Of a DNA stretch of 64,000 bases, positions 10,370 to 20,362 are shown in pieces. The position numbers and the translations under genes were made by a program. Below the pieces are notes generated by a model that had not been told where the DNA came from, searched no databases, and saw only the letters and a list, made by a program, of their open reading frames with translations. Every line of letters begins with the position of its first letter. The first letter of the stretch is position 1. The DNA lies in the IMG/VR virus record IMGVR_UViG_3300034682_000176, positions 160,811 to 224,810 of that record; one strand, given 5' to 3'.

Positions 10370-10507
10370 AACATCTCTCTACAGATGGCTTTGGCTGTCT
10401 GTAGAGAGGTATATTTTTTACAAAACTGTGAGGACACCGCATCCTTTAAGTTTAGATGTGGGTATACCACACCTGTGTTTGTAACCGTTCGTAAAAGGAA
10501 AGTCATA

Positions 10508-10930
10508 ATGACTAAGTTCCGTGTTTGGCTGTACTCGTTGTTTGAGCCTGTCCTGCTCAACTTTCTGATGCTGACCTTTCCTGGTGTCCGCCAGGATACG
10601 GTCCACTCTCTGATCACAGGGGCATCGGAAGAGCCTGAGCAAAAACCACGTGGTGGTGATTTGCAATCGATCTACAACAACGCTCGCAATCCGCAAGCGT
10701 CGTTTCGGATCTTTCACCTGCGGGTCAAGTACTTTGGATGGGATATCAACCACGCGTTGAAAACACCGGATCGCAAAGATGAGATCCGTGTGGCTGGGTA
10801 CGTCTACAATCTGCGGGAAATTTTCAACAACGCTCCCATGAAGAAGATCAGCTACCACACGTTCCACCGACGTGTGACTCAACAAGGCTGGGACCCTCGT
10901 AAGGCGTTGGAAACTCCTCCAAACAAGTAA
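10508..10930 (+). CDS. RV..GWD..A.TP module protein (2 modules), putative nucleic-acid binding
   Basis: SFRIFHLRVKYFGWDINHALKTP and SYHTFHRRVTQQGWDPRKALETP; AAGGAA RBS. Confidence 0.8.
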   Translation: MTKFRVWLYSLFEPVLLNFLMLTFPGVRQDTVHSLITGASEEPEQKPRGGDLQSIYNNARNPQASFRIFHLRVKYFGWDINHALKTPDRKDEIRVAGYVYNLREIFNNAPMKKISYHTFHRRVTQQGWDPRKALETPPNK

Positions 10931-11091: not shown

Positions 11092-11841
11092 ATGCTAGAC
11101 TTTTTCTCCTTCTCCAAGTTCTTGACGATCTTGAACCTGTGTGCAGCTTTGCTGATTGGTGTTGCCATCGGTGTTTACATTGGTTACCACAATGGTCGGC
11201 GGTCTCGCAACCATTACGTCGAGAAAGCTTACCGTTACGCCACTGCGGTTGAAGAGTTCAGTCAGTGGTGTGCGCATATGCACCCAGCATACCGTTTGAT
11301 TGCACGCCAGCTGCGTGCGGTCGGTGAAGGCGAAGCACTCAACGCTGGTTCTCCAGCTGGCTCTGAACCCTGCACTGTGAGTGGTTTGCGAACACAATTG
11401 GAACGCTTGGCCAATCTGTCCAAGAACCCTGAATACATGATCAATGAAGCTTTGCAGAAACTACGCTTCAAGATCGAAGGCATGCAAGACCAACGCAAAA
11501 ACAAGCGTGGTGGTGGAATCGATGCCGGCAGCGCCGTGATCACCAAAACCGACGTGCAAGACGCCATCACATCTGTGGCGCAAGAGCTGTTCATCAACCG
11601 CATGATCGACCAACACACTGCAGCTGAATTGGCTATCCCACAAGACCAGCTGCACCGCTTTGACGCTTTGACCCTACTCAAGCGCAAGGTCGAACGTCGC
11701 ACTGGTCAAAACTTCAACTTCATGGGTAAGCGAACTACTTATATTGCTAAGGACCAAGTGTTGGAGCTGATTGATGATGCGCTGGACCACGCCAGCTTCA
11801 AGCAACCGCAAAATCAGCAAGGTGTGACCCACTCTTCGTAA
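11092..11841 (+). CDS. Hypothetical membrane-anchored protein
   Basis: N-terminal hydrophobic helix followed by basic residues; two related C-terminal segments. Confidence 0.75.
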   Translation: MLDFFSFSKFLTILNLCAALLIGVAIGVYIGYHNGRRSRNHYVEKAYRYATAVEEFSQWCAHMHPAYRLIARQLRAVGEGEALNAGSPAGSEPCTVSGLRTQLERLANLSKNPEYMINEALQKLRFKIEGMQDQRKNKRGGGIDAGSAVITKTDVQDAITSVAQELFINRMIDQHTAAELAIPQDQLHRFDALTLLKRKVERRTGQNFNFMGKRTTYIAKDQVLELIDDALDHASFKQPQNQQGVTHSS

Positions 11842-11909
11842 AAATTAAATACATTTGCATATTCTGCGAAGAGCAAAACTGCTCCAACCATCCACAAGAA
11901 GAACACTTC

Positions 11910-12179
11910 ATGAACGAACTGTTTTACCTCATTACCATCGCCTTGATTGTTCGGCTCACGCCAAGCAACGGTGTTGTGGGACTCATCTGCGACAACCGTG
12001 CAGAGTCGTTCAGCTTGCTGCCACAAACTCCCTTTGTGGAGTACGGCATGCAGCAGACTTTCTGCACTTTGTACAACCTTACCCGCTCCCGTTTTTCGCT
12101 TGTCAAAAAGCTTCTTCCTACCAATCTGGGTGATACCGACGCCTCGAAGTCACGAAAGTGTCTTGTGTACGTTTGTTAG
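11910..12179 (+). CDS. Small hypothetical protein
   Basis: 89-aa ORF, weak RBS. Confidence 0.4.
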   Translation: MNELFYLITIALIVRLTPSNGVVGLICDNRAESFSLLPQTPFVEYGMQQTFCTLYNLTRSRFSLVKKLLPTNLGDTDASKSRKCLVYVC

Positions 12180-12303
12180 TTATCTTACACCACCACCGTC
12201 CAATGTACCCCGTCCATTTCGTGTAAATTGCGAGGACGCACAGTGCTGCACCACCATCCGCTCCTGGAGGGCGGATGGTGGGCAGACTGGTTTATGCTTT
12301 ACT

Positions 12304-13926
12304 TTATGCCGTCATGAAAGCCAAAGTGGCATCCAAGATGTCGGTGCTGTTGCTGAAACGGATCTTGCGTTCGTTGTCCAGGTAGTAGGCTTTGTTTTTC
12401 AAAAGCTTGCGCACCTCTTCGATGGCTTCGTCCGACAGCACAGCTTGCAGCGACATGGTGTCACCGTCAAAGTCAGCACCTAGCAAAGCCATGTGAGACT
12501 GGTGAACGATCAAGCCGTTCACAAATGTGCTGTCCTTGTCGGGGAAGCTATGAAGCACTTCATCCGTGGGGTTCCACTGTTCATCCAGCTCCCGCACTTG
12601 CTTGTACTTGACTGTGGTGAACAGCTTCATGAACGCCGGGTAGATACCACCATAACCCTGGATGGGGTAGCGGGTCACAAACCCTGGCAACTTGCCGGAC
12701 AAGCGCGCCACACTCAGGTACAGCAGTTCCGTCATGGTGATCGGGGCTACGTGCTTTTTGTCCAAGTGTGCTGGCAGGTCACGGATGTCCTGGAAGAACT
12801 TCACGTACTTGCCGTCGTTGTACAGCAGTCCCATGCAGTGCTTGGAGCGGTTGGTAAACACGGGCAGGTGACGAGTGTCTTGCCGTGCGAAGTTGGCAAT
12901 CACGGTCTCCAAGCCGTCGGTGGTCATCCAGCGATCGTAGTCCTTTTGGACGTGGCTGTTGAGGACTTCTTCCTTTTGCCAGGTCTTGAGGTTGGTCATG
13001 TAGGCAAAGGTGTTGTTCTCGCTGAACACCTGTTGCACATAACGGGTACGGATCTCGAACAACGTCTTAGGAGACGCGGCACGCAAGAACTGGTGCAGAC
13101 CGACACCGATGTCGTTCATACAGACCCGGTTGGGGTCAGAGATGTGGGTGGGCTCGTTGACCGAAGCCGTGATCACGTTTCGGGTCGAGTTGAACGTCTT
13201 GCGACTGAGCCACTTCCCCAGGATCAGTTTGTGCTTGCCTTCCAGCAGGCTTTGGATGTAGTCGTACAGCTCCAGAATACTCTTTTGCAGGTTGCTGTAG
13301 ACATTGTCGTAGGAGTAAGGTGTGCGTCGTGCGATGTCGGCATCCACCAGCTGAGACTGCGCAAGGATGCGGCGGTAGAAGGTGTTGACTTCATCTTCTT
13401 CCGGCTTACCGTTCGGGCTGATGGTGTAGTCCCGCAAACCGGCCGGCATGACCAACATGTAGCGCAGCAAGTGCTTGTCCTCACCGACGGCCTTGTTGAA
13501 GAACTTGATGTTCTCGGTACGCTTGTCTGAAGCATTGGACTCAAAGCTCAAATCCGCCACGTGCTTCAAAAAGAACGTGTAGCCAGTTTGTGCGGTGGGT
13601 TCGTTGCTCTTTTCAAACTGACGCAGTTTGGGATTCCAGATGGCGGAGATCGAGCCATCCATGATGCCTTTGTAAAAAGACTTCAAGGTGATGATGGTCT
13701 TGTACACCAAGGGGTGCAAGATGGGGTAGCGCAGATCGATGTAGCCAAACATGCGGGTGCGATGCTCGCTGCCAATCGGACCAAAGATCTGGGTCGAGAA
13801 CAAACCATCTTGGTGGAAGTTGCTACCCTGACCAAAGATCTGCAGCTCCTTGATCTGACCCAAGCGCGATAGGTCAGAATCCTTGACACGCAACAGCGCG
13901 ATGTTAACCGGTGGGAGTGAAGACAT
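12304..13926 (-). CDS. Virion RNA polymerase beta' N-terminal subunit (phiKZ gp180-like)
   Basis: GLFSTQIFG, VMPAGLRD, TRYP and catalytic GADFDGD motif; 540 aa. Confidence 0.9.
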   Translation of the reverse strand: MSSLPPVNIALLRVKDSDLSRLGQIKELQIFGQGSNFHQDGLFSTQIFGPIGSEHRTRMFGYIDLRYPILHPLVYKTIITLKSFYKGIMDGSISAIWNPKLRQFEKSNEPTAQTGYTFFLKHVADLSFESNASDKRTENIKFFNKAVGEDKHLLRYMLVMPAGLRDYTISPNGKPEEDEVNTFYRRILAQSQLVDADIARRTPYSYDNVYSNLQKSILELYDYIQSLLEGKHKLILGKWLSRKTFNSTRNVITASVNEPTHISDPNRVCMNDIGVGLHQFLRAASPKTLFEIRTRYVQQVFSENNTFAYMTNLKTWQKEEVLNSHVQKDYDRWMTTDGLETVIANFARQDTRHLPVFTNRSKHCMGLLYNDGKYVKFFQDIRDLPAHLDKKHVAPITMTELLYLSVARLSGKLPGFVTRYPIQGYGGIYPAFMKLFTTVKYKQVRELDEQWNPTDEVLHSFPDKDSTFVNGLIVHQSHMALLGADFDGDTMSLQAVLSDEAIEEVRKLLKNKAYYLDNERKIRFSNSTDILDATLAFMTA

Positions 13927-13956
13927 GTCGAAGCTCTCAAGATAGGATTAAAGGGT

Positions 13957-13965
13957 TCACAAAAT
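13957..13965 (-). promoter_or_regulatory. Putative late promoter ATnnTnTGA
   Basis: attttgtga about 30 nt upstream of the vRNAP beta' start. Confidence 0.5.
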
Positions 13966-14069
13966 CTAACCGACAGTGTGGTAAGACAAGTCAGGACTTG
14001 TCGAAGTGCTATTGTTTTTTCAAAATTATTGTACCTCTATGATGGGAGACTCGTTTGACCTGTATTTGG

Positions 14070-14080
14070 TTACATATATA
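14070..14080 (+). promoter_or_regulatory. Putative early promoter TTACATATATA
   Basis: Recurrent motif at the head of the module-protein operon. Confidence 0.65.
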
Positions 14081-14130
14081 GATCACGATGCGTACTGTCA
14101 ACCACAACCTTTCACGGAAGGAACCTCTCT

Positions 14131-14310
14131 ATGTCTTCTACCACCACCGTCCCAGCCGCTTCCGGCTCTCAAGCGCTCAGCGCCTACGAAACCCTCTACC
14201 AACTCCATGTAGAGAAACCGCAACCTTCAGCGGAACCCAAAAACGTTGCGGCGACCCAACAGCCGCGCGCCGTCCTGCGTCGTCGCTATCGTCGTACGGT
14301 GACCCGCTAA
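14131..14310 (+). CDS. 59-aa peptide with Arg-rich C-terminus (not in ORF track)
   Basis: GGAAGGAA RBS; MSSTTTVPAASGSQALSAYETLYQLHVEKPQPSAEPKNVAATQQPRAVLRRRYRRTVTR*. Confidence 0.65.
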   Translation: MSSTTTVPAASGSQALSAYETLYQLHVEKPQPSAEPKNVAATQQPRAVLRRRYRRTVTR

Positions 14311-14338
14311 TTCCTGGGGATGTAATTCCTATAGCAAC

Positions 14339-14540
14339 ATAACCTATCAGTAAGCCTCAGGACTCTTGTCCGGGCTGTGATATCACGCTGCGTTTAACAC
14401 GCAGACCACATTGACAGTACGCGCACCGGGGTGCTTGACTCTTACGCAGGTCTGCACCCCACCCATCACAATCGAGCATCCGTATAGCGACTATGTCGGT
14501 CGTCGGAGTCTAGGTTGTTTCACTGTTTAGAGGGCAGTGA
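14339..14540 (+). ncRNA. Candidate structured RNA / cis-regulatory element
   Basis: Closing stem 14339-14346/14511-14518 encloses at least five helices; followed by the tcactg/cagtga hairpin. Confidence 0.5.
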
Positions 14541-14568
14541 GCCGTTAGTAACAAAAAGGAGTATCAAC

Positions 14569-15327
14569 GTGAGAGCACCGGTTAATCAAGAGCTGATTAA
14601 AAGCTATCATCAATTCAACACCAAGAACGTGCCGCTGAGCGTGTTCTTGATGCGTGTCAACAATCTGCGCTGGGACGTCAAAAGAGCTGGCGAAACCCCT
14701 TACGTACCACGAACGGGCGGGCTTGTTGCACAATACAAAGAACTCTACGATCGCATCGAATCTCCAACTGTGGGGTTCGATGTGTTCTGCCGCCGAATGC
14801 GCAACGGCCGTGATGTCGAAGAAGCAGCCAAAGCTCCGAAGATTGAACCTTCTGAGCTGTACAGCTACTACCACCAATACCAAGACAAACCAGCGGTAGG
14901 GTACACCACCTTCTTTAACCGCGTGGTGTCTTTGAATTGGGAGCGCATCAAAGCCATCACCACACCACCGACGCGCAAAATGAAACCGCGCAAAGAGGTA
15001 CGTTCCAACACGTACCTGGCCATGTGGTTCAACAAAAACATTGAACGCGCCAAAGTCGATTGGAGCTGTTTTTCCCAACGTGTCTTCAAAGGCGGGTGGG
15101 ACAAAGAAAGAGCTCTGACGACACCTTCCATGGCCGAGAATGAATCTCAGCTGCGCGCCTTCTACAACCAACACCCTGACTGTCCAGTCAACTACATGAC
15201 GTTCCACCGTCGTGTGTATGCCCTGGGGTGGGATATGCAGCGTGCAATCTCTACCCCAGTTCGTGACAACACCCGTTCGCAGCGTGAGCGCGTCGTTGTG
15301 AGTTCCCGACCATCCAAGTACAACTAA
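14569..15327 (+). CDS. Tandem module protein (5 modules), putative DNA/RNA binding
   Basis: AAAAGGAG RBS with GTG start; five V.[FYW]..F..R[VM]...[W]D...A..TP units. Confidence 0.85.
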   Translation: MRAPVNQELIKSYHQFNTKNVPLSVFLMRVNNLRWDVKRAGETPYVPRTGGLVAQYKELYDRIESPTVGFDVFCRRMRNGRDVEEAAKAPKIEPSELYSYYHQYQDKPAVGYTTFFNRVVSLNWERIKAITTPPTRKMKPRKEVRSNTYLAMWFNKNIERAKVDWSCFSQRVFKGGWDKERALTTPSMAENESQLRAFYNQHPDCPVNYMTFHRRVYALGWDMQRAISTPVRDNTRSQRERVVVSSRPSKYN

Positions 15328-15350
15328 TCCACCCCGTAAAGCGTATAGTC

Positions 15351-15818
15351 ATGACCACTACTTTGCGTATTTTGAAGACCGCTCCTTACATCACACCCAT
15401 CGAACAACTGTTGCGTGAGTATCAAGAATTTGCCAACCTGAGTCTTCCCAAAGACGTCTACATCAGCCGTGGTGGTGTTCAAGCCAAAACACCTCAGTTG
15501 AGTGCTGCCAGCTACATCCCTGACAGTCTGGAAGACCGTTCGCTACTCAAGCAGTTTGAACAGATCGAAGGACGTGTCGTAGATTTTGGCACCTTCCGCC
15601 GCCGTGTGCGCGGCGGTATGGAAACCATGCCAGCAGCCAAGACTCCGCTGCGCAAACGCAATCGTTCGTCCTACCAGAGCCACAACAAAAGTGGCATTCG
15701 TCTGGCGTACGAGCATGCTCCATCGACTCCGGCCGTTCCATTCAGCACGTACTACGTGCGTGTGAAAGTGCTGAGCTGGCCTATCCAAAAAGCTCTGTAC
15801 ACCCCTTTGCATCATTGA
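15351..15818 (+). CDS. Tandem module protein (2 modules plus 1 degenerate)
   Basis: VDFGTFRRRVRGGME..AAKTP; VPFSTYYVRVKVLSWPIQKALYTP. Confidence 0.8.
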   Translation: MTTTLRILKTAPYITPIEQLLREYQEFANLSLPKDVYISRGGVQAKTPQLSAASYIPDSLEDRSLLKQFEQIEGRVVDFGTFRRRVRGGMETMPAAKTPLRKRNRSSYQSHNKSGIRLAYEHAPSTPAVPFSTYYVRVKVLSWPIQKALYTPLHH

Positions 15819-15834
15819 CCCCTTTGTTTTTGAA

Positions 15835-16182
15835 ATGAGTATGTTGGACCAACCCACACCACAAATCGACAAGACCACTTTTAAGTCTCCGAAAGACATT
15901 CGGGAACAACTGGAGCAAATCTATCGTGACCATCCCAATCCACCGATTCCATACTCGGTGTTTTACTCGCGTGTGCAGTACCTGGGTTGGGACGTCATCA
16001 GTGCGTTGACCACGGCCATTGCCAAGGAGTTCAGCCATCGCCCACGTGGCGAGATCCGTCAGTTCTACGACGACAATGTAGCGCGCGCTCAAGTCAACCT
16101 GAACGTATACAACGGTCGGGTGCGTATGGGTGGTTGGGACAAAGAAAAAGCGTTGACGACACCTGTTGGCGCTCGTGCTTGA
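15835..16182 (+). CDS. Tandem module protein (2 modules)
   Basis: IPYSVFYSRVQYLGWDVISALTT; VNLNVYNGRVRMGGWDKEKALTTP. Confidence 0.8.
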   Translation: MSMLDQPTPQIDKTTFKSPKDIREQLEQIYRDHPNPPIPYSVFYSRVQYLGWDVISALTTAIAKEFSHRPRGEIRQFYDDNVARAQVNLNVYNGRVRMGGWDKEKALTTPVGARA

Positions 16183-16200
16183 TATAAAAAGGAGTTTCAG

Positions 16201-17202
16201 ATGAGTCAGAAAAAACCATCTCAGTACAACCGTGATGAGTTGATCAACTACTACAACAAAGTAGACAACCCAGCGGTACCGCTGGGTCGCTTCTTGCAAC
16301 GGGTCAGCCAAAGCGGCTGGACCTTGGAGCGTGCAGCCACTGCTACGGCTTACCGCAGCGGTGGTACTGCCCACCGCTGTACCGAGTACTACAACGCAGT
16401 TCCTCCAGAGGAGCGCGGTGTGACGTTCGATACGTTCTACAGCCGTGTGATGCGGGGGTGGGACATGCACCGCGCTGCCCGTGAAAAGCCACGGGAAAAA
16501 GCAGCACCCTACCGTGAGTTCTACGACAAACACCCCAACCCCCAAGTGGACTTCGCCATTTTTTATGTGCGGGTCCACTCCAACAATTGGGAACTAGAGC
16601 GCGCCATTACCACACCGGTCGTACCTATGGCCGATGGTCGTGACTGGTGCCAGGAACGGGTGTTCTACGAAGCCAACCGCCATCGCGCCAAGGTTGATCT
16701 GGCCTTGTTCCACAACCGCGTGAAAATGCGCAAGTGGGACATGGAAACTGCATTGGTCACACCGAAGCGTGACAGCGCAACGCGAAACGAAAGCCTGCGC
16801 AGCTACTTTGACAACCACCCCAATCCACAAGTCAGCTACAAGACTTTTGTCAGCCGTGCGGGTCGTGGTGGTTGGACCAAAGAGTCAGCCATCACAGCCC
16901 AGCCACGTCCAGTGACAGCCCGTCGTAACGGCGCCAAGTCGGACATGCCTTTGACACCTCGTCAGCAACGCTTTGCCGATGCGCGGGAGTTCTTCAAAGA
17001 GCACAAGGACTTGGCGGTTGTGGATGTGCAAACGTTCTTGCGTCGTGTGTGTTCAGACAACTGGGACCCAATGCAGGCCATCACTACCGAACTGGCGGAC
17101 ACCAAACCCACACGGGCTGAAACTGGTGCAATGACCAATTCGTTGCAATCGGCATTCATGAACTTCTGTCGTCCGGCTGTGTCGTCATCAGCTCACTCAT
17201 AA
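16201..17202 (+). CDS. Tandem module protein (6 modules)
   Basis: AAAAGGAGTTTCAG RBS; six modules, e.g. VDFAIFYVRVHSNNWELERAITTP. Confidence 0.85.
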   Translation: MSQKKPSQYNRDELINYYNKVDNPAVPLGRFLQRVSQSGWTLERAATATAYRSGGTAHRCTEYYNAVPPEERGVTFDTFYSRVMRGWDMHRAAREKPREKAAPYREFYDKHPNPQVDFAIFYVRVHSNNWELERAITTPVVPMADGRDWCQERVFYEANRHRAKVDLALFHNRVKMRKWDMETALVTPKRDSATRNESLRSYFDNHPNPQVSYKTFVSRAGRGGWTKESAITAQPRPVTARRNGAKSDMPLTPRQQRFADAREFFKEHKDLAVVDVQTFLRRVCSDNWDPMQAITTELADTKPTRAETGAMTNSLQSAFMNFCRPAVSSSAHS

Positions 17203-17278
17203 TTGACTGTCAGCCATCTAAGCGTCCTCACGGATGCTTAGATGGTTTGATGTCACATTTGACTAAGGGGTATTTTTT

Positions 17279-20200
17279 ATGGCCGGAAAGAAAACTAAAA
17301 AGGACGGGGTCGACGAGTTGGATTTTGGTGATCTTGACGATCTGGATATGGATGAGGTCAATTTTGACGATTCCAGTCTTGATGATCCCGACCGCGCTCC
17401 GTCTCGTTCTGAAGTTGCCAAGGACATGGCCAAACAAGCCAGCACAGGCTTTGTGGAATCCATGGCCAAGAAGACAGCAGAAAAGGCACTGCCGCCGGAG
17501 TACGCCAGCAACTATAGCGATGTCATGGACCTGGCAGGATTTGCCACTGACGTCGTGGATCGCAATAAGCAGCAGCTGGACAAATCCATGTTCAAGCTGG
17601 GCAAAGAAGTCAAGAAGCTGTTGCCCATGCAAATTGGGTTGCTGGACAAATACCTCGCCAAAAAGGAAGAGGAGTTTGCCGAGTTCAAACAGCAGTCCGA
17701 AGAAGAGATGCGCAATGCCTCGATTTCTTCGGAGCTCAGCTCGATCTTTGACCAACAGCTCGATATCCAAAAGGCACTGGAAGCTAAGCGTTCTGCAGAG
17801 GGTCGCGTTGAGACCAAAGAGCGCCTGATCGCTACCAAGCTCAATTTGGATGTACTGCGTAGCATCGATGCCAATGTGGCAACCAGTGCTGCGTTTGAGA
17901 CGCAAATCTCCAAGCAGTTCTTCCGCAAGTCGTTGGAGTTGCAGTACAAGTCGTTCTTCGTGCAAGCAGACATGCTGCGCACGATGCGGGACAGCTACAA
18001 GGGCTTTACGCTGTTGTTGACCAACATCGAAAAGAACTCGGCGCTGCCTGACTACGTCAAACTCAAGAACACTGAGCGACTGGCTGACATTGCTCGCACC
18101 AACGCGACACAAGCGGTATATTCCCAATTGTTCAGCCGCAACAAGTACATCCAAACAGTCAAGGACCGTTTAGGGCGTGCTGTCAACGACAAGGTCACAT
18201 CGATCACCGACTCCATGGGAGACATCACTGATGCCCTGTCGATGATGAACGATGGTGGCAAAGGTGCGGGTTTGCGTGCACTGGGTGGTATTGCTGCTGG
18301 TATTGGTGGTGACACTTTGGGTGAGATGGCAGGTACTCGCTTGGGAGGTAAACTGCAAGAGCGCTTGAAGGACAACAAGTATCTCAACACCGGCGCCAAC
18401 TACCTCAAAGCCTTTGCAGCTTCTCCAGCCACGCTGATGCGGTCTTTGCGCGACAAGGCGGCCGAGCGTGAACAAGAAGCGGAAGGCCGTGGCAGCTGGA
18501 GCTCTAAGCTGTACGGCATGGCCCGTGCAGGTTTGGATTTGACAGCCGAAGATCGTCCTAACATCGGTGTCAAACGGGACAATTACCTGGACCACAACCA
18601 GCCAGCCATCTTTGACAACAAGGCGCACCGTTCGATCACGGAAGCCATTCCCATGCTGCTGTCGCGTATCTTGCAAAAGAACAGCGACATGAACCAGATG
18701 TACTACCAGGCTAACCAACACATCGTTAGCCCACCCAACTCACCGTTGCTGATGTACGACTACCAAGGTCGTAAGCTGGACAGCGGCGAAAGCATCAAAG
18801 CCAAACTGCAAGACAGTGTGTTCTCCCAGCGTTCGACCAAGAACCGCACGACGGCCATTGCCTCGAACACGCTGACCAAGTCCAAGGCCAACATCTCCCG
18901 CAATACGGCGATGACCAAGGACCAAAAGAAACAGCTCAACGCCACCTTGAACGCCAAAGGCGCGCAAGACGCATTGGCTGAGTACTACGCCCGAGCATCG
19001 TCGATCAAGGGGATCAACCTCGATCACGACACACTCATCGTCAATGCCGGTAAGAACAAAGACTTGGCGGCCTTGATCAACGCTAACCCTCAACTTGCAA
19101 AGGTCATTGATGTACTTCGCCAAAATTCAGACAAAGACAATTCATACATCGACCAAAGCCTTGCTGACGTCCAGAACCCTTATCCTATCGAGGCGATTAA
19201 AAACCTCTTTACAGATTCCTCGAAACTCACCAGTGCCAAGCAACCTAACCTTGTCACGGACAAAAACGCAAACGCCATCTCCAAAGCGCTGAGTCGTTTC
19301 ATCCTCAACCGTGGTGAAGACATCACGGCCAACAACATCTTGTCGCGGCTGGCATTCAGCTACTTCCGACCTGATGAGTTCAATGAGCAAGTCAAGCAAA
19401 ACATCGCGGTGTTGATCGACGATGTCAAACGCATCACCTCGCACGGCGATATCGTTTTGCAAAGCTCACTGATGGCCTTGTTGGCACTGGTCAACCAGTC
19501 GCTCAAAGCCAACTTCGAGATTGACCCTGCGGTCTTTAGCAATATCCGCGAACTGTACCCCGACTTTGTCAAGCAGTCCCGACTGACCATTGAAAATCTG
19601 GCCGAAGGCAAGATAGATGCTGGTGTCGACGAGTACATGAACTTCATGGACATCAAGGACGCTACCAAGGTGTCTAACCGCGAAGTCGGTTTGATTCGTG
19701 AGCAGGTGTTTGCGACTTCTGGGGTTGATCGCATTCTCTCTCGCGCCAAGAGCAAGGGTGAAGAGTTCAAGAAAGGACTCACAGCGGCCAGCAGTTCTCC
19801 GACAGCCATGGCTGAGTTCCTGCTGCAACAAGCCAAGAGCTTCAAGTCAACGGTCGCCGCCTCGCTGACCAAGACGTCCAATGAAATCCAGCAAGGATTT
19901 ACCAAGCTGGGTAACCACGTCGATACCTTGGTCAAGGAAGGTTCTGCCAAAGCCCTGGGGTTGATGGTCCAAGAACTCTCTGCCCTGGATCAAAAACTGG
20001 AAAACTACATCGTGCTGACACAGAACGATTTGGCCCAGCGTACTGAAGAGCTGCAAAACGCCAAAGACAGCGTGGTTGAAGTCACTACCCAAACCAAGCT
20101 GCAGCGTGCCGCCACCCGTGAACTTGAACTGTTTGTGCGCATGGGGGAGAAGAACCTCAACGCACTGGTCAAGCTGCGCGAGACCGTCCAACGCAACACC

Positions 20201-20362
20201 CAGTCCATCCGCCAGATGGCACAAAACCCAACCACTCCTCCAACCGAAGCTTTGCGCAAAATGGGCACGGCCATCCGTGACGTGTTGGACCAAGCCAAGA
20301 AACAGTTGGCAGAGCTGGAAGCCGCAGGGGCTTCTGAGCGCGCGGCCGCAGTAGCGGCGTGA
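17279..20362 (+). CDS. Large virion tail protein, N-terminal half of a phiKZ gp181-like tape/needle protein
   Basis: Acidic N-terminus, RKSLELQY, ALPDYVK and FD....RSITE.IP blocks, coiled coils; divergent from the gp180-like gene; atggtttga motif at 17242. Confidence 0.7.
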   Translation: MAGKKTKKDGVDELDFGDLDDLDMDEVNFDDSSLDDPDRAPSRSEVAKDMAKQASTGFVESMAKKTAEKALPPEYASNYSDVMDLAGFATDVVDRNKQQLDKSMFKLGKEVKKLLPMQIGLLDKYLAKKEEEFAEFKQQSEEEMRNASISSELSSIFDQQLDIQKALEAKRSAEGRVETKERLIATKLNLDVLRSIDANVATSAAFETQISKQFFRKSLELQYKSFFVQADMLRTMRDSYKGFTLLLTNIEKNSALPDYVKLKNTERLADIARTNATQAVYSQLFSRNKYIQTVKDRLGRAVNDKVTSITDSMGDITDALSMMNDGGKGAGLRALGGIAAGIGGDTLGEMAGTRLGGKLQERLKDNKYLNTGANYLKAFAASPATLMRSLRDKAAEREQEAEGRGSWSSKLYGMARAGLDLTAEDRPNIGVKRDNYLDHNQPAIFDNKAHRSITEAIPMLLSRILQKNSDMNQMYYQANQHIVSPPNSPLLMYDYQGRKLDSGESIKAKLQDSVFSQRSTKNRTTAIASNTLTKSKANISRNTAMTKDQKKQLNATLNAKGAQDALAEYYARASSIKGINLDHDTLIVNAGKNKDLAALINANPQLAKVIDVLRQNSDKDNSYIDQSLADVQNPYPIEAIKNLFTDSSKLTSAKQPNLVTDKNANAISKALSRFILNRGEDITANNILSRLAFSYFRPDEFNEQVKQNIAVLIDDVKRITSHGDIVLQSSLMALLALVNQSLKANFEIDPAVFSNIRELYPDFVKQSRLTIENLAEGKIDAGVDEYMNFMDIKDATKVSNREVGLIREQVFATSGVDRILSRAKSKGEEFKKGLTAASSSPTAMAEFLLQQAKSFKSTVAASLTKTSNEIQQGFTKLGNHVDTLVKEGSAKALGLMVQELSALDQKLENYIVLTQNDLAQRTEELQNAKDSVVEVTTQTKLQRAATRELELFVRMGEKNLNALVKLRETVQRNTQSIRQMAQNPTTPPTEALRKMGTAIRDVLDQAKKQLAELEAAGASERAAAVAA

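What the first reader, a model, noticed from the sequence alone, without database searches (positions are those of the whole stretch)
14070..17250. Self-contained operon (promoter, Arg-rich peptide, structured RNA, four module proteins, hairpin) wedged between two core genes
Seen: early-type promoter at 14070, an unannotated 59-aa ORF (14131-14310) ending PRAVLRRRYRRTVTR, the structured RNA, four module genes and a closing hairpin at ~17208-17250. It sits between the gp180-like and gp181-like genes, which are neighbours in phiKZ. Known: Arg-rich motifs such as lambda N bind RNA hairpins. Inference: peptide, RNA and arrays may form one regulatory or ribonucleoprotein system acquired as a unit.
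Basis: partly seen in the sequence, partly recalled or inferred. Interest (0 to 1): 0.7.

Follow-up and report, generated by a model that had tools for sequence, protein, structure and literature searches.

The report
Early operon of HTH-repeat proteins
A jumbo phage carries a 3.35 kb accessory block between two core genes, holding an early-type promoter, a small arginine-tailed protein, a folded leader RNA and four proteins made only of repeated DNA-binding-type modules; the parts are real, but they do not always travel together.

Summary
A promoter motif (14054-14081) belongs to a set of about 25 one-strand sites. A 59-aa ORF (14131-14310) is under purifying selection. A 258-nt leader (14311-14568) has seven local hairpins, three of them with compensatory changes. 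Four genes (A starts at GTG 14569, not TTG 14515) encode 15 tri-helical modules. A conserved 14-bp hairpin closes the block (17214-17245). The block interrupts a divergent RNAP beta'/gp181-like junction that is only 62-118 bp in AgentSmith, RP12 and Phikzvirus SL2.

The modules belong to a large uncharacterised family (PHROG 1065). They resemble the HTH modules of homing-endonuclease DNA-binding regions, but no nuclease domain is present. All four proteins are basic and conserved (dN/dS about 0.1-0.14).

Relatives split the parts:
- The peptide, with an invariant C-terminal RRY, accompanies the operon in four of five lineages where the upstream region could be read.
- The long RNA occurs only in the two closest lineages, and one natural variant lacks 45 nt of it.
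- One lineage has the promoter and module genes with neither peptide nor RNA.
- Module genes also occur elsewhere in this genome and in relatives.

Best reading: an early accessory operon of nuclease-free multi-HTH nucleic-acid binders with a lineage-specific cis leader. A three-part ribonucleoprotein is not supported.

The parts
12304..13926 (-). Left flank: virion-type RNA polymerase beta'-like subunit (phiKZ gp180-like), 540 aa
   Evidence: tblastn finds 314 jumbo-phage records; the best is AgentSmith at 51% identity. Weak Pfam matches to RNA_pol_Rpb1 domains 1 and 2.
14012..14026 (+). Conserved upstream block TTGTTTTTTCAAAAT that travels with the operon promoter
   Evidence: Conserved in the window, L008, L063 group and L077, and as a T/A-run variant in L079. 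It is kept even where the left neighbour is not RNAP beta'. It is not a general feature of the other promoter copies.
14054..14081 (+). Early-type promoter motif TTTGAC-N10-TTACATATATAG
   Evidence: 13 copies with up to 1 mismatch, all on the + strand; about 25 with the wider consensus. The stretch 14001-14130 is 97-100% identical to L008 against 77% overall.
14131..14310 (+). Gene for a 59-aa basic protein (pI 10.9) with C-terminal Arg-rich tail
   Evidence: In frame, pS 0.42 exceeds pN 0.16 (dN/dS 0.29); in both other frames pS is below pN. Homologues occur in L008, L074, L065-70, L063 group and L079, with invariant RRY. No family match.
14311..14568 (+). Structured 258-nt leader between the peptide gene and gene A. 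Hairpins lie at about 14345-14382, 14388-14404, 14428-14460, 14468-14518 (with an inner hairpin) and 14520-14540.
   Evidence: Folding results. Compensatory changes occur only in the three 5' helices; the 3' half is 87% identical to L008. Single copy in the genome. No Rfam match.
14569..15327 (+). Module protein A, 252 aa, 5 modules, pI 9.95
   Evidence: (dN/dS 0.14). PHROG 1065 at E 6.9e-30.
15351..15818 (+). Module protein B, 155 aa, 2 clear modules plus a degenerate N-terminal one, pI 10.1
   Evidence: (dN/dS 0.12).
15835..16182 (+). Module protein C, 115 aa, 2 modules, pI 9.3
   Evidence: dN/dS 0.11. The two-module AlphaFold model has pLDDT 91 with three helices per module.
16201..17202 (+). 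Module protein D, 333 aa, 6 modules, pI 9.7
   Evidence: dN/dS 0.13. PHROG 1065 at E 2.5e-32 and the C-terminal part of PHROG 3377 'HNH endonuclease' at E 2.7e-8.
17214..17245 (+). Closing hairpin: 14-bp stem, 4-nt loop, followed by TTTG
   Evidence: z = -6.3. Conserved in L074, L009, L008, L063 and L076, with a U-A to C-G compensatory change in L063. Absent from relatives without the insert.
17279..20362 (+). Right flank: gp181-like virion/tail protein, N-terminal part, 1027 aa
   Evidence: PHROG 3201 at E 4.8e-53. 31% identical to AgentSmith gp81.
10385..10930 (+). Fifth module gene outside the block (two modules at 10655-10918). The real start is probably downstream of 10385; the L008 ortholog is 138 aa.

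Best explanation
The block is an accessory operon of a phiKZ-like (chimallivirus-type) jumbo phage. It is transcribed from one of the phage's own early-type promoters and ends at a conserved hairpin. It was inserted at the otherwise tight divergent junction between the virion RNAP beta' gene and the gp181-like gene.

Its main products are four basic proteins built only of about 45-residue tri-helical helix-turn-helix modules, 15 in all. These modules are the kind used as DNA-binding units by phage homing endonucleases, but no nuclease domain is present. I infer that the proteins act as multi-site, sequence-reading nucleic-acid binders made early in infection, most likely binding DNA.

The first gene encodes a small basic protein whose only strongly conserved part is a C-terminal P-x-x-V-x-R-R-R-Y-x-x-T tail. 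It usually accompanies the operon. The 258-nt folded stretch is a lineage-specific cis leader of gene A, not an independent RNA partner.

Shown: the parts exist, are conserved and are under selection, and their presence or absence in relatives is as described. Inferred: early timing, DNA binding, and a regulatory role for the leader.
For: Insertion at a conserved junction.

Promoter: it belongs to a one-strand family of about 25 sites that often follow terminators. This fits the published description of jumbo-phage early promoters as a conserved AT-rich motif of about 10 nt that can be found bioinformatically upstream of early operons (PMC7598289).

Module proteins:
- Purifying selection on all five genes; module number and order (5-2-2-6) are identical in L008.
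- Module family: 2046 representative proteins at E <= 1e-3, in arrays of up to 22 modules.
- In relatives the modules coincide with Pfam PVL_ORF50, HTH_psq, HTH_28, I-TevI_DNA-bd and I-HmuI NUMOD-like matches. Some are fused to GIY-YIG or T5orf172 nuclease domains.
- Matches to PHROG 1065 and to the C-terminal part of PHROG 3377 'HNH endonuclease'.
- The only isolate-phage matches are Bacillus phage proteins labelled HNH endonuclease. One of them, IEBH gp13, consists of just three modules.
- The two-module model has pLDDT 91 with three helices per module.
- All proteins are basic.

Peptide: coding signal and homologues.

Leader: present only in the close lineages, and a natural variant lacks 45 nt.
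Against: - No expression data. The RNA-library contigs show flat depth that cannot be told from DNA.
- DNA binding rests on weak homology. The window's own proteins get no Pfam hit. The broad module profile matches the LacI headpiece in PDB only at E 0.06. Fold searches give nothing significant: Foldseek best E 2.8, VIA best Z 3.5.
- No target sites were identified.
- The 3' half of the leader and the 5' UTR of the peptide gene are more conserved than neighbouring coding DNA. They may therefore do more than a passive leader would.
Confidence: 0.55

Rival explanations
1. Cis-regulatory leader peptide. The 59-aa ORF would be an upstream ORF whose translation sets how much of gene A and the downstream genes is expressed. 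This could work by ribosome pausing on the conserved C-terminal RRRY segment, by coupling, or by attenuation through the following structure. The peptide itself would have no function in trans.
For: - Only the last 15 or so residues are conserved across lineages, while the N-terminal part is variable and low in complexity. Synonymous changes occur inside the Arg codons.
- The ORF always lies directly upstream of gene A, at 258, 145 or 41 nt.
- The L063 leader ends in a hairpin plus a U6 run just before the ribosome-binding site of A.
- The peptide and the leader are lost together in the L077 lineage, where A sits directly behind the promoter.
- RNAalifold pairs the bases just after the stop codon with the SD and start region of A.
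Against: - That closing helix is not recovered in single-sequence folds, and the predicted partners of the SD differ between the window and L008.
- The window and L008 have no terminator-like U-run before gene A.
- 55-64 aa is long for a leader peptide.
- A second conserved patch (ETLY-x-L) in three lineages suggests a folded or interacting protein.
- No known arrest motif was tested.
Confidence: 0.22
2. One reading: the Arg-rich peptide binds hairpins of the leader RNA, in the manner of lambda N with boxB, and together with the module proteins forms a ribonucleoprotein or antitermination system acquired as a unit.
For: - The tail has 6 Arg in its last 10 residues, kept at the protein level.
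- Hairpins with compensatory changes lie directly downstream on the same transcript.
- The peptide and the module genes co-occur in four of five lineages.
Against: - The RNA is not conserved beyond the two closest lineages. It is partly deleted in a natural variant and absent from L079, which keeps the peptide.
- Module genes function without the peptide or the RNA in L076-78.
- The hairpin loops are not conserved and do not look like boxB.
- No similarity to N or to any family.
- The Arg-rich stretch is C-terminal here, whereas it is N-terminal in N.
- The modules resemble DNA-binding HTH units.
Confidence: 0.1
3. Selfish remnant. The block would be a decaying homing-endonuclease-type mobile cassette that has lost its nuclease. 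It would persist only because it was inserted at a tolerated intergenic site and would contribute nothing to the phage.
For: - Free-standing intergenic insertion between conserved genes, with presence or absence varying among relatives.
- The modules are of the homing-endonuclease DNA-binding type.
- The surrounding region is a hotspot. An HNH_3-like 468-aa gene sits 3' of RNAP beta' in L074 and is absent from the window.
- D is reduced to a remnant in L076/L077.
Against: - dN/dS of 0.10-0.14 at dS of 1.1-1.9, comparable to the core genes at 0.10-0.12.
- Module number and order are preserved, with no frameshifts or stops in four lineages.
- The block has its own conserved promoter and terminator.
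- GC content equals that of the flanks.
Confidence: 0.08

Closest known systems
DNA-binding modules of phage homing endonucleases (I-TevI HTH, I-HmuI NUMOD-like, tandem NUMODs of I-Bth0305I; Pfam PF20987, PF22083, PF07453)
   Same: Short helical HTH-type modules strung in tandem on flexible linkers. In relatives of the window's proteins the modules coincide with these Pfam models and are fused to GIY-YIG or T5orf172 domains. They are encoded by free-standing genes inserted between conserved phage genes.
   Different: None of A-D has a nuclease domain, and there is no room for one. The window's own proteins do not reach these Pfam models. There are 15 modules spread over four proteins rather than 1-3 modules attached to a catalytic domain.
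PHROG 1065 / Pfam PVL_ORF50-like proteins, e.g. Bacillus phage IEBH gp13 (annotated 'HNH endonuclease')
   Same: Significant profile matches (E 2.5e-32 and 6.9e-30). These are nuclease-free arrays of the same module with the F-x-x-R-V...G-W-x-x-E-x-A-x-T-P signature.
   Different: The function of that family is unknown. The window carries an operon of four such genes under an early-type jumbo-phage promoter, with a dedicated small protein and a leader.
Early (virion RNAP) promoters of phiKZ-like and AR9-like jumbo phages
   Same: A highly conserved AT-rich motif of about 10-12 nt, repeated upstream of operons and detectable by sequence alone (PMC7598289).
   Different: The motif sequence is specific to this phage clade. 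No transcription start site or timing data exist for it.
Lambda N / boxB antitermination
   Same: A small protein with an Arg-rich stretch is encoded first after an early promoter and is followed by RNA hairpins.
   Different: The Arg-rich stretch is C-terminal. No boxB-like conserved loop is present. The RNA is not conserved wherever the peptide is. There is no sequence similarity. Transcription here is presumably by a phage multisubunit RNAP.
Leader-peptide control of downstream genes (SecM-secA, ErmCL-ermC, SpeFL-speF type); recalled from general knowledge, not tested here
   Same: A small upstream ORF with a conserved C-terminal segment, followed by a structured spacer and then the regulated operon.
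   Different: No arrest motif, alternative structure or effector has been identified. The SD-sequestering helix is not robust.

Membership tests
Jumbo-phage early (vRNAP) promoter | Conserved AT-rich motif of about 10 nt, repeated upstream of operons, found bioinformatically | tested here: met
   13 copies with up to 1 mismatch, all on the + strand. About 25 sites fit the wider consensus, many after a hairpin plus T-run. Definition taken from PMC7598289.
Jumbo-phage early (vRNAP) promoter | Transcription start a few bases downstream and expression in the first minutes of infection | not testable with these tools
   Only metagenomic contigs of RNA libraries are available. Their depth is flat and cannot be told from DNA.
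Homing endonuclease (HNH / GIY-YIG) | Nuclease catalytic domain | tested here: not met
   No nuclease family in Pfam, NCBIfam or PHROGs for A-D. The modules fill the proteins.
Homing endonuclease (HNH / GIY-YIG) | Tandem HTH/NUMOD-type DNA-binding modules | tested here: met
   Match to the C-terminal part of PHROG 3377 (E 2.7e-8). In family members the modules overlap the I-TevI_DNA-bd, I-HmuI NUMOD-like and HTH_psq models.
Homing endonuclease (HNH / GIY-YIG) | Free-standing insertion between conserved genes, polymorphic among relatives | tested here: met
PHROG 1065 / PVL_ORF50-like module arrays | Significant profile match over repeated modules | tested here: met
   A at E 6.9e-30, D at E 2.5e-32, C at E 7.3e-9, B at E 3.2e-4.
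Helix-turn-helix DNA-binding domain | Tri-helical fold with a recognition helix, and significant similarity to a solved HTH | tested here: inconclusive
   The model shows three helices per module with pLDDT 91. However, the PDB sequence match is E 0.06 to the LacI headpiece, and fold searches give at best Foldseek E 2.8 and VIA Z 3.5.
Lambda N-type ARM peptide with boxB | Arg-rich motif | tested here: met
   RRRYRRTVTR, with RRY invariant in six sequences. It is C-terminal rather than N-terminal.
Lambda N-type ARM peptide with boxB | Conserved short hairpin with a fixed loop that co-occurs with the peptide | tested here: not met
   Hairpin loops differ between the window and L008. The RNA is absent or unrelated in L063 and L079, which keep the peptide.
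Known RNA families (Rfam 15) | Covariance-model match | tested here: not met
   No match up to E = 1 on 13500-17800, both strands.
Leader-peptide attenuator or arrest system | Upstream ORF with a conserved C-terminus directly before the regulated gene | tested here: met
Leader-peptide attenuator or arrest system | Conserved alternative structure, terminator or SD-sequestering helix | tested here: inconclusive
   A consensus closing helix is predicted but is not reproduced in single-sequence ensembles. A hairpin plus U6 occurs only in the L063 lineage.

The most novel reading that the evidence does not exclude
The 45-residue modules may form a modular nucleic-acid recognition system comparable in logic to TALE or PPR arrays. 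Each orthologous module keeps its own sequence across lineages, while paralogous modules are only 25-40% identical. Arrays of 2 to over 20 modules occur in thousands of uncharacterised phage and bacterial proteins. In this reading, the four proteins of this operon would together read long, specific DNA (or RNA) targets early in infection. The RRRY-tailed peptide would act as their cofactor.
Probability: 0.08. Interest if true: 0.8.

Novelty: new variant of a known kind. Interest (0 to 1): 0.4.

Why it matters
Nuclease-free arrays of homing-endonuclease-type HTH modules are very common. This search found 2046 representative clusters, and PHROG 1065 catalogues the family. They are routinely mislabelled 'HNH endonuclease', and no function is known for them.

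This locus is a clean case for study. It has four such genes under purifying selection, their own early-type promoter and terminator, a dedicated small partner protein, and natural variants that lack individual parts. That makes it a good entry point for finding out what these arrays bind and why phages keep them.

It also shows that the RNAP beta'/gp181 junction and its surroundings are a hotspot of accessory-gene turnover in this chimallivirus clade. The specific ribonucleoprotein idea, which would have been the striking part, is not supported by the comparative data.

Tried and rejected
- DNA searches (blastn on 12000-19000 in phages) and exact-pattern scans of viral contigs for the RNA and the promoter-leader found nothing outside the window's own genome.
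- tblastn of D and of the peptide against isolate phages found nothing.
- Word-indexed protein search with D found only two close relatives. Protein-pattern scans of viral contigs with A found none.
- The first metagenome scan with the gp181-like protein found none. The alignment-based scan gave one locus, L081.
- Single-sequence AlphaFold of A failed (pLDDT 34).
- Fold searches of the good two-module model gave only non-significant hits or unnamed matches. In PDB, Foldseek's best was the phage lipoprotein Ltp at E 2.8, and VIA-wide's best was Z 3.5. AFDB clusters returned only uncharacterised proteins. The poor global scores are probably because the two small domains are flexibly linked.
- ESM Atlas look-alikes of the peptide scored below any useful threshold (0.79).
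- Complex prediction of the peptide against A plus D gave no answer (score 0.00). This is not evidence either way.
- RNA-library contigs laid on 12200-17800 gave flat depth and no transcript ends, so they say nothing about transcription.
- An SD-sequestering long-range helix suggested by RNAalifold was not reproduced by partition-function folding of the window or L008.
- The 468-aa HNH_3-like gene of L074 carries no modules and is absent from the window genome, so it is not the missing nuclease of this block.
- A weak resemblance between the peptide tail and RDRYRTVITR in the M48-like 192-aa protein of L077 did not hold up (BLASTP E 0.034; hhalign shows nothing).
- The 84-aa overlapping ORF 14088-14342 is interrupted in L008.


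Full report
CONTEXT

The window is bases 160811-224810 of a 224.8 kb viral record with direct terminal repeats. The gene at 12304-13926 (minus strand) is a jumbo-phage RNA polymerase beta'-type subunit. tblastn finds it in 314 phage records. The nearest is Bacillus phage AgentSmith at 51% identity, followed by Ralstonia phage RP12 at 40% and the phiKZ group at 37%. The gene at 17279-20362 matches the N-terminal quarter of the phiKZ gp181-type giant tail/virion protein (PHROG 3201, E 4.8e-53).

In three relatives these two genes are divergent neighbours: 62 bp apart in AgentSmith, 118 bp in RP12 and 75 bp in Phikzvirus SL2. In a metagenomic relative, L081, they abut. In the window they are 3352 bp apart.

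THE PARTS

Promoter. TTACATATATAG at 14070 is one of 13 near-exact copies in the genome, all on the + strand. In the window there are 8 matches against 0.84 expected. Relaxing the search shows about 25 sites with the form TTTGA-N12-(T/C)TACA(T/C)ATATAC. They typically follow a GC-rich hairpin and T-run and precede a ribosome-binding site. This fits the published generalisation that each RNAP-encoding jumbo phage has its own conserved AT-rich early-promoter motif of about 10 nt, detectable by sequence alone (PMC7598289). Timing has not been measured.

Small protein. The ORF 14131-14310 encodes 59 aa ending PRAVLRRRYRRTVTR. A syntenic Logan contig, L008, is 77% identical in DNA overall. It carries an ORF of exactly the same length with 71% identical residues. 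Substitutions are synonymous-biased in this frame only: pS 0.42 against pN 0.16, giving dN/dS 0.29, while in the other two frames pS is below pN. Further homologues occur in L074/L075 (92%), L065-L070 (91%), the L063 group (64 aa, about 35%) and L079 (55 aa). RRY is invariant, and the tail pattern P-x-x-V-x-R-R-R-Y-x-x-T is recognisable throughout, while the N-terminal half varies freely. It is a real gene with no detectable relatives outside this clade.

Leader RNA. Gene A starts at GTG 14569, which has AAAGGAG upstream. The TTG 14515 start is ruled out because L008 starts at the equivalent ATG and has a 1-nt indel in the supposed extension. The non-coding stretch is therefore 14311-14568. 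The single sequence folds modestly better than shuffles (z = -2.15).

On five sequences from three sub-lineages, seven local helices are 97.8% paired. Five pairs changed on both sides, all in the three 5' helices; 2 of 500 shuffles reach this and slid controls give 0-1. The 3' half is nearly invariant, so it carries no covariation information. At 87% identity it is better conserved than the flanking coding DNA. Rfam has no match, and the element is single-copy in the genome. A long-range helix pairing the bases after the peptide stop codon with the SD and start of gene A appears in the consensus fold. It is not reproduced in partition-function folds of the individual sequences, so I treat it only as a lead.

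Module proteins. A, B, C and D contain 5, 2, 2 and 6 copies of a module of about 45 residues, with the consensus L-x3-Y-x7-V-x4-F-x2-R-V-x3-G-W-x4-A-x2-T-P. The same counts occur in L008. dN/dS is 0.10-0.14 at dS of 1.1-1.9, like the flanking core genes. All four proteins are basic, with pI 9.3-10.1.

The window's proteins have no Pfam or NCBIfam family. They match PHROG 1065 (unknown function; E 6.9e-30 for A and 2.5e-32 for D) and the C-terminal part of PHROG 3377 'HNH endonuclease'.

A profile of the 30 modules finds 2046 representative proteins at E <= 1e-3. Most are arrays of 2 to 22 modules. In those relatives the modules coincide with Pfam PVL_ORF50, HTH_psq, HTH_28, Sigma70_r4, I-TevI_DNA-bd and I-HmuI NUMOD-like matches. 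A few carry GIY-YIG or T5orf172 nuclease domains.

Among isolate phages the only matches are Bacillus phage proteins, several labelled 'HNH endonuclease'. One of these, IEBH gp13, turns out to be three modules and nothing else.

With a 56-row alignment, AlphaFold models a two-module unit at pLDDT 91, with three helices per module. Fold searches do not discriminate such small flexibly linked bundles. The broad module profile reaches the LacI headpiece HTH only at E 0.06. The HTH and DNA-binding assignment is therefore a well-founded inference, not a demonstration.

Closing hairpin. The 14-bp stem at 17214-17227/17232-17245 (z = -6.3) is conserved in every lineage that has the operon, with a compensatory U-A to C-G change in L063 and a different loop in L076. 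Relatives without the insert lack it. It belongs to the block.

DO THE PARTS TRAVEL TOGETHER?

Relatives fall into these groups, with identity of the flanking genes to the window in brackets:

1. Window, L074/75 and L065-70 (RNAP beta' 95%): promoter, peptide, 258-nt leader, A-B-C-D, hairpin.
2. L008 (88%): the same arrangement.
3. L063/L072/L073 (79%): promoter, a 64-aa peptide, an unrelated 145-nt leader ending in a hairpin plus U6, then A, a 238-aa B-like protein and D.
4. L076/L077/L078 (gp181-like 69-73%): the same promoter block, including the TTGTTTTTTCAAAAT element, sits about 40 nt before gene A. It is followed by B and a D remnant. There is no peptide and no leader. The left neighbours are an AAA ATPase and an M48-like protein rather than RNAP beta'.
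5. L079 (A 38% identical): a promoter-like motif, a 55-aa peptide with the RRRY tail, then gene A after only 41 nt.
6. L062 (RNAP beta' 78%): a D-like gene on the 3' side of RNAP beta'.
7. L081 and AgentSmith: the junction is uninterrupted. L081 has a two-module gene on the 3' side of RNAP beta'.

The window itself has a fifth, two-module gene at 10385-10930. Contigs from two wastewater runs carry a variant of the window's leader lacking 14398-14442. The deletion lies between two ACGCAG repeats and would re-form the third hairpin.

Three conclusions follow. The promoter, module genes and hairpin form the stable core. The peptide is a frequent but dispensable companion. The long RNA is a recent, lineage-specific and deletable elaboration.

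MECHANISM

Most likely (about 0.55), this is an early-transcribed accessory operon whose products are nuclease-free multi-HTH proteins that bind nucleic acid, probably DNA, at multiple or long sites. The leader acts in cis on expression of gene A. What the proteins bind is unknown; candidates are phage or host DNA, a role in gene regulation or host takeover, or interference with related mobile elements.

For the peptide there are two live readings:

- It is a trans-acting basic partner protein.
- It is a cis-acting upstream ORF. This is favoured by conservation confined largely to the C-terminal tail, by its fixed position directly before gene A, and by its loss together with the leader.

I rate the second at about 0.2.

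NOVELTY

The module family and the promoter class are known kinds, although the family is functionally uncharacterised. The arrangement is a new variant. It combines four array genes with their own early promoter, an orphan RRRY-tailed small protein and a structured leader, inserted at the RNAP beta'/gp181 junction. It is moderately interesting, mainly as an experimental handle on a very large unknown family.

Noticed in passing
window 10385-10930 (modules at 10655-10918): A fifth module gene with two modules lies about 3 kb upstream, on the other side of the RNAP beta' gene and outside the 'self-contained' block. It is conserved in L008 (73%) and L074 (98%). L081 and L062 also carry module genes on that side.
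   Followed up: partly
window about 11842-12303, and L074:1627-3033: The 3' side of the RNAP beta' gene is a variable spot. L074 carries a 468-aa gene there with a weak HNH_3 domain (E 9e-5) and lacks the window's 249-aa ORF 11092-11841. Contigs from several runs diverge from the window at 12297. The 468-aa gene is absent from the window's genome.
   Followed up: partly
window 14398-14442: Contigs from two wastewater runs carry a 45-nt deletion inside the leader, between two ACGCAG repeats. The deletion removes the first TTGAC-containing segment and would re-form the preceding hairpin with the second repeat.
   Followed up: no
window 14001-14130: The promoter region and the whole 5' UTR of the peptide gene are 97-100% identical to L008, although the two genomes are 77% identical overall and dS in the flanking genes is 0.7-1.9. 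This is the best-conserved stretch of the locus and is not explained by the promoter motif alone.
   Followed up: no
between window 13975 and 13976; L074:4797-4844: L074, L066 and related contigs have a 48-nt insertion between the RNAP beta' start and the operon promoter. It contains a GC-rich hairpin followed by a T-rich run. L068 and L069 have an entirely different left flank.
   Followed up: no
whole genome G000; in the window at 1261, 3266, 14070, 26550, 28499, 34917, 40426, 55712, 60941: A family of about 25 promoter-like sites (TTTGA-N12-TTACATATATAC, then N4-TGA), all on the + strand. Many follow terminator-like hairpins. Several share a longer upstream sequence, GCTTTTATTTCAG.
   Followed up: partly
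L077:251-829: In the lineage that lacks the peptide, its position is taken by a 192-aa protein with an HEEGH motif (weak Peptidase_M48 match, E 7.6e-4). Its C-terminal region contains RDRYRTVITR, which resembles the peptide tail RRRYRRTVTR. The similarity is not statistically significant.
   Followed up: partly
window 17279-20362 and the following ORF: The phiKZ gp181 equivalent is split in this clade into a protein of about 1030 aa and a following protein of about 1270-1410 aa that carries the SLT lytic transglycosylase domain. This is seen in L063 and L076, and in AgentSmith as gp81 and gp82.
   Followed up: no
sequencing runs holding window 13900-17300: Near-identical sequence turns up in subsurface, soil, wastewater, freshwater, surface and air metagenomes, so the phage clade is environmentally widespread. 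Its host is not identified. The only isolate-phage matches to the modules are Bacillus phages, and the nearest named relative is also a Bacillus phage.
   Followed up: no
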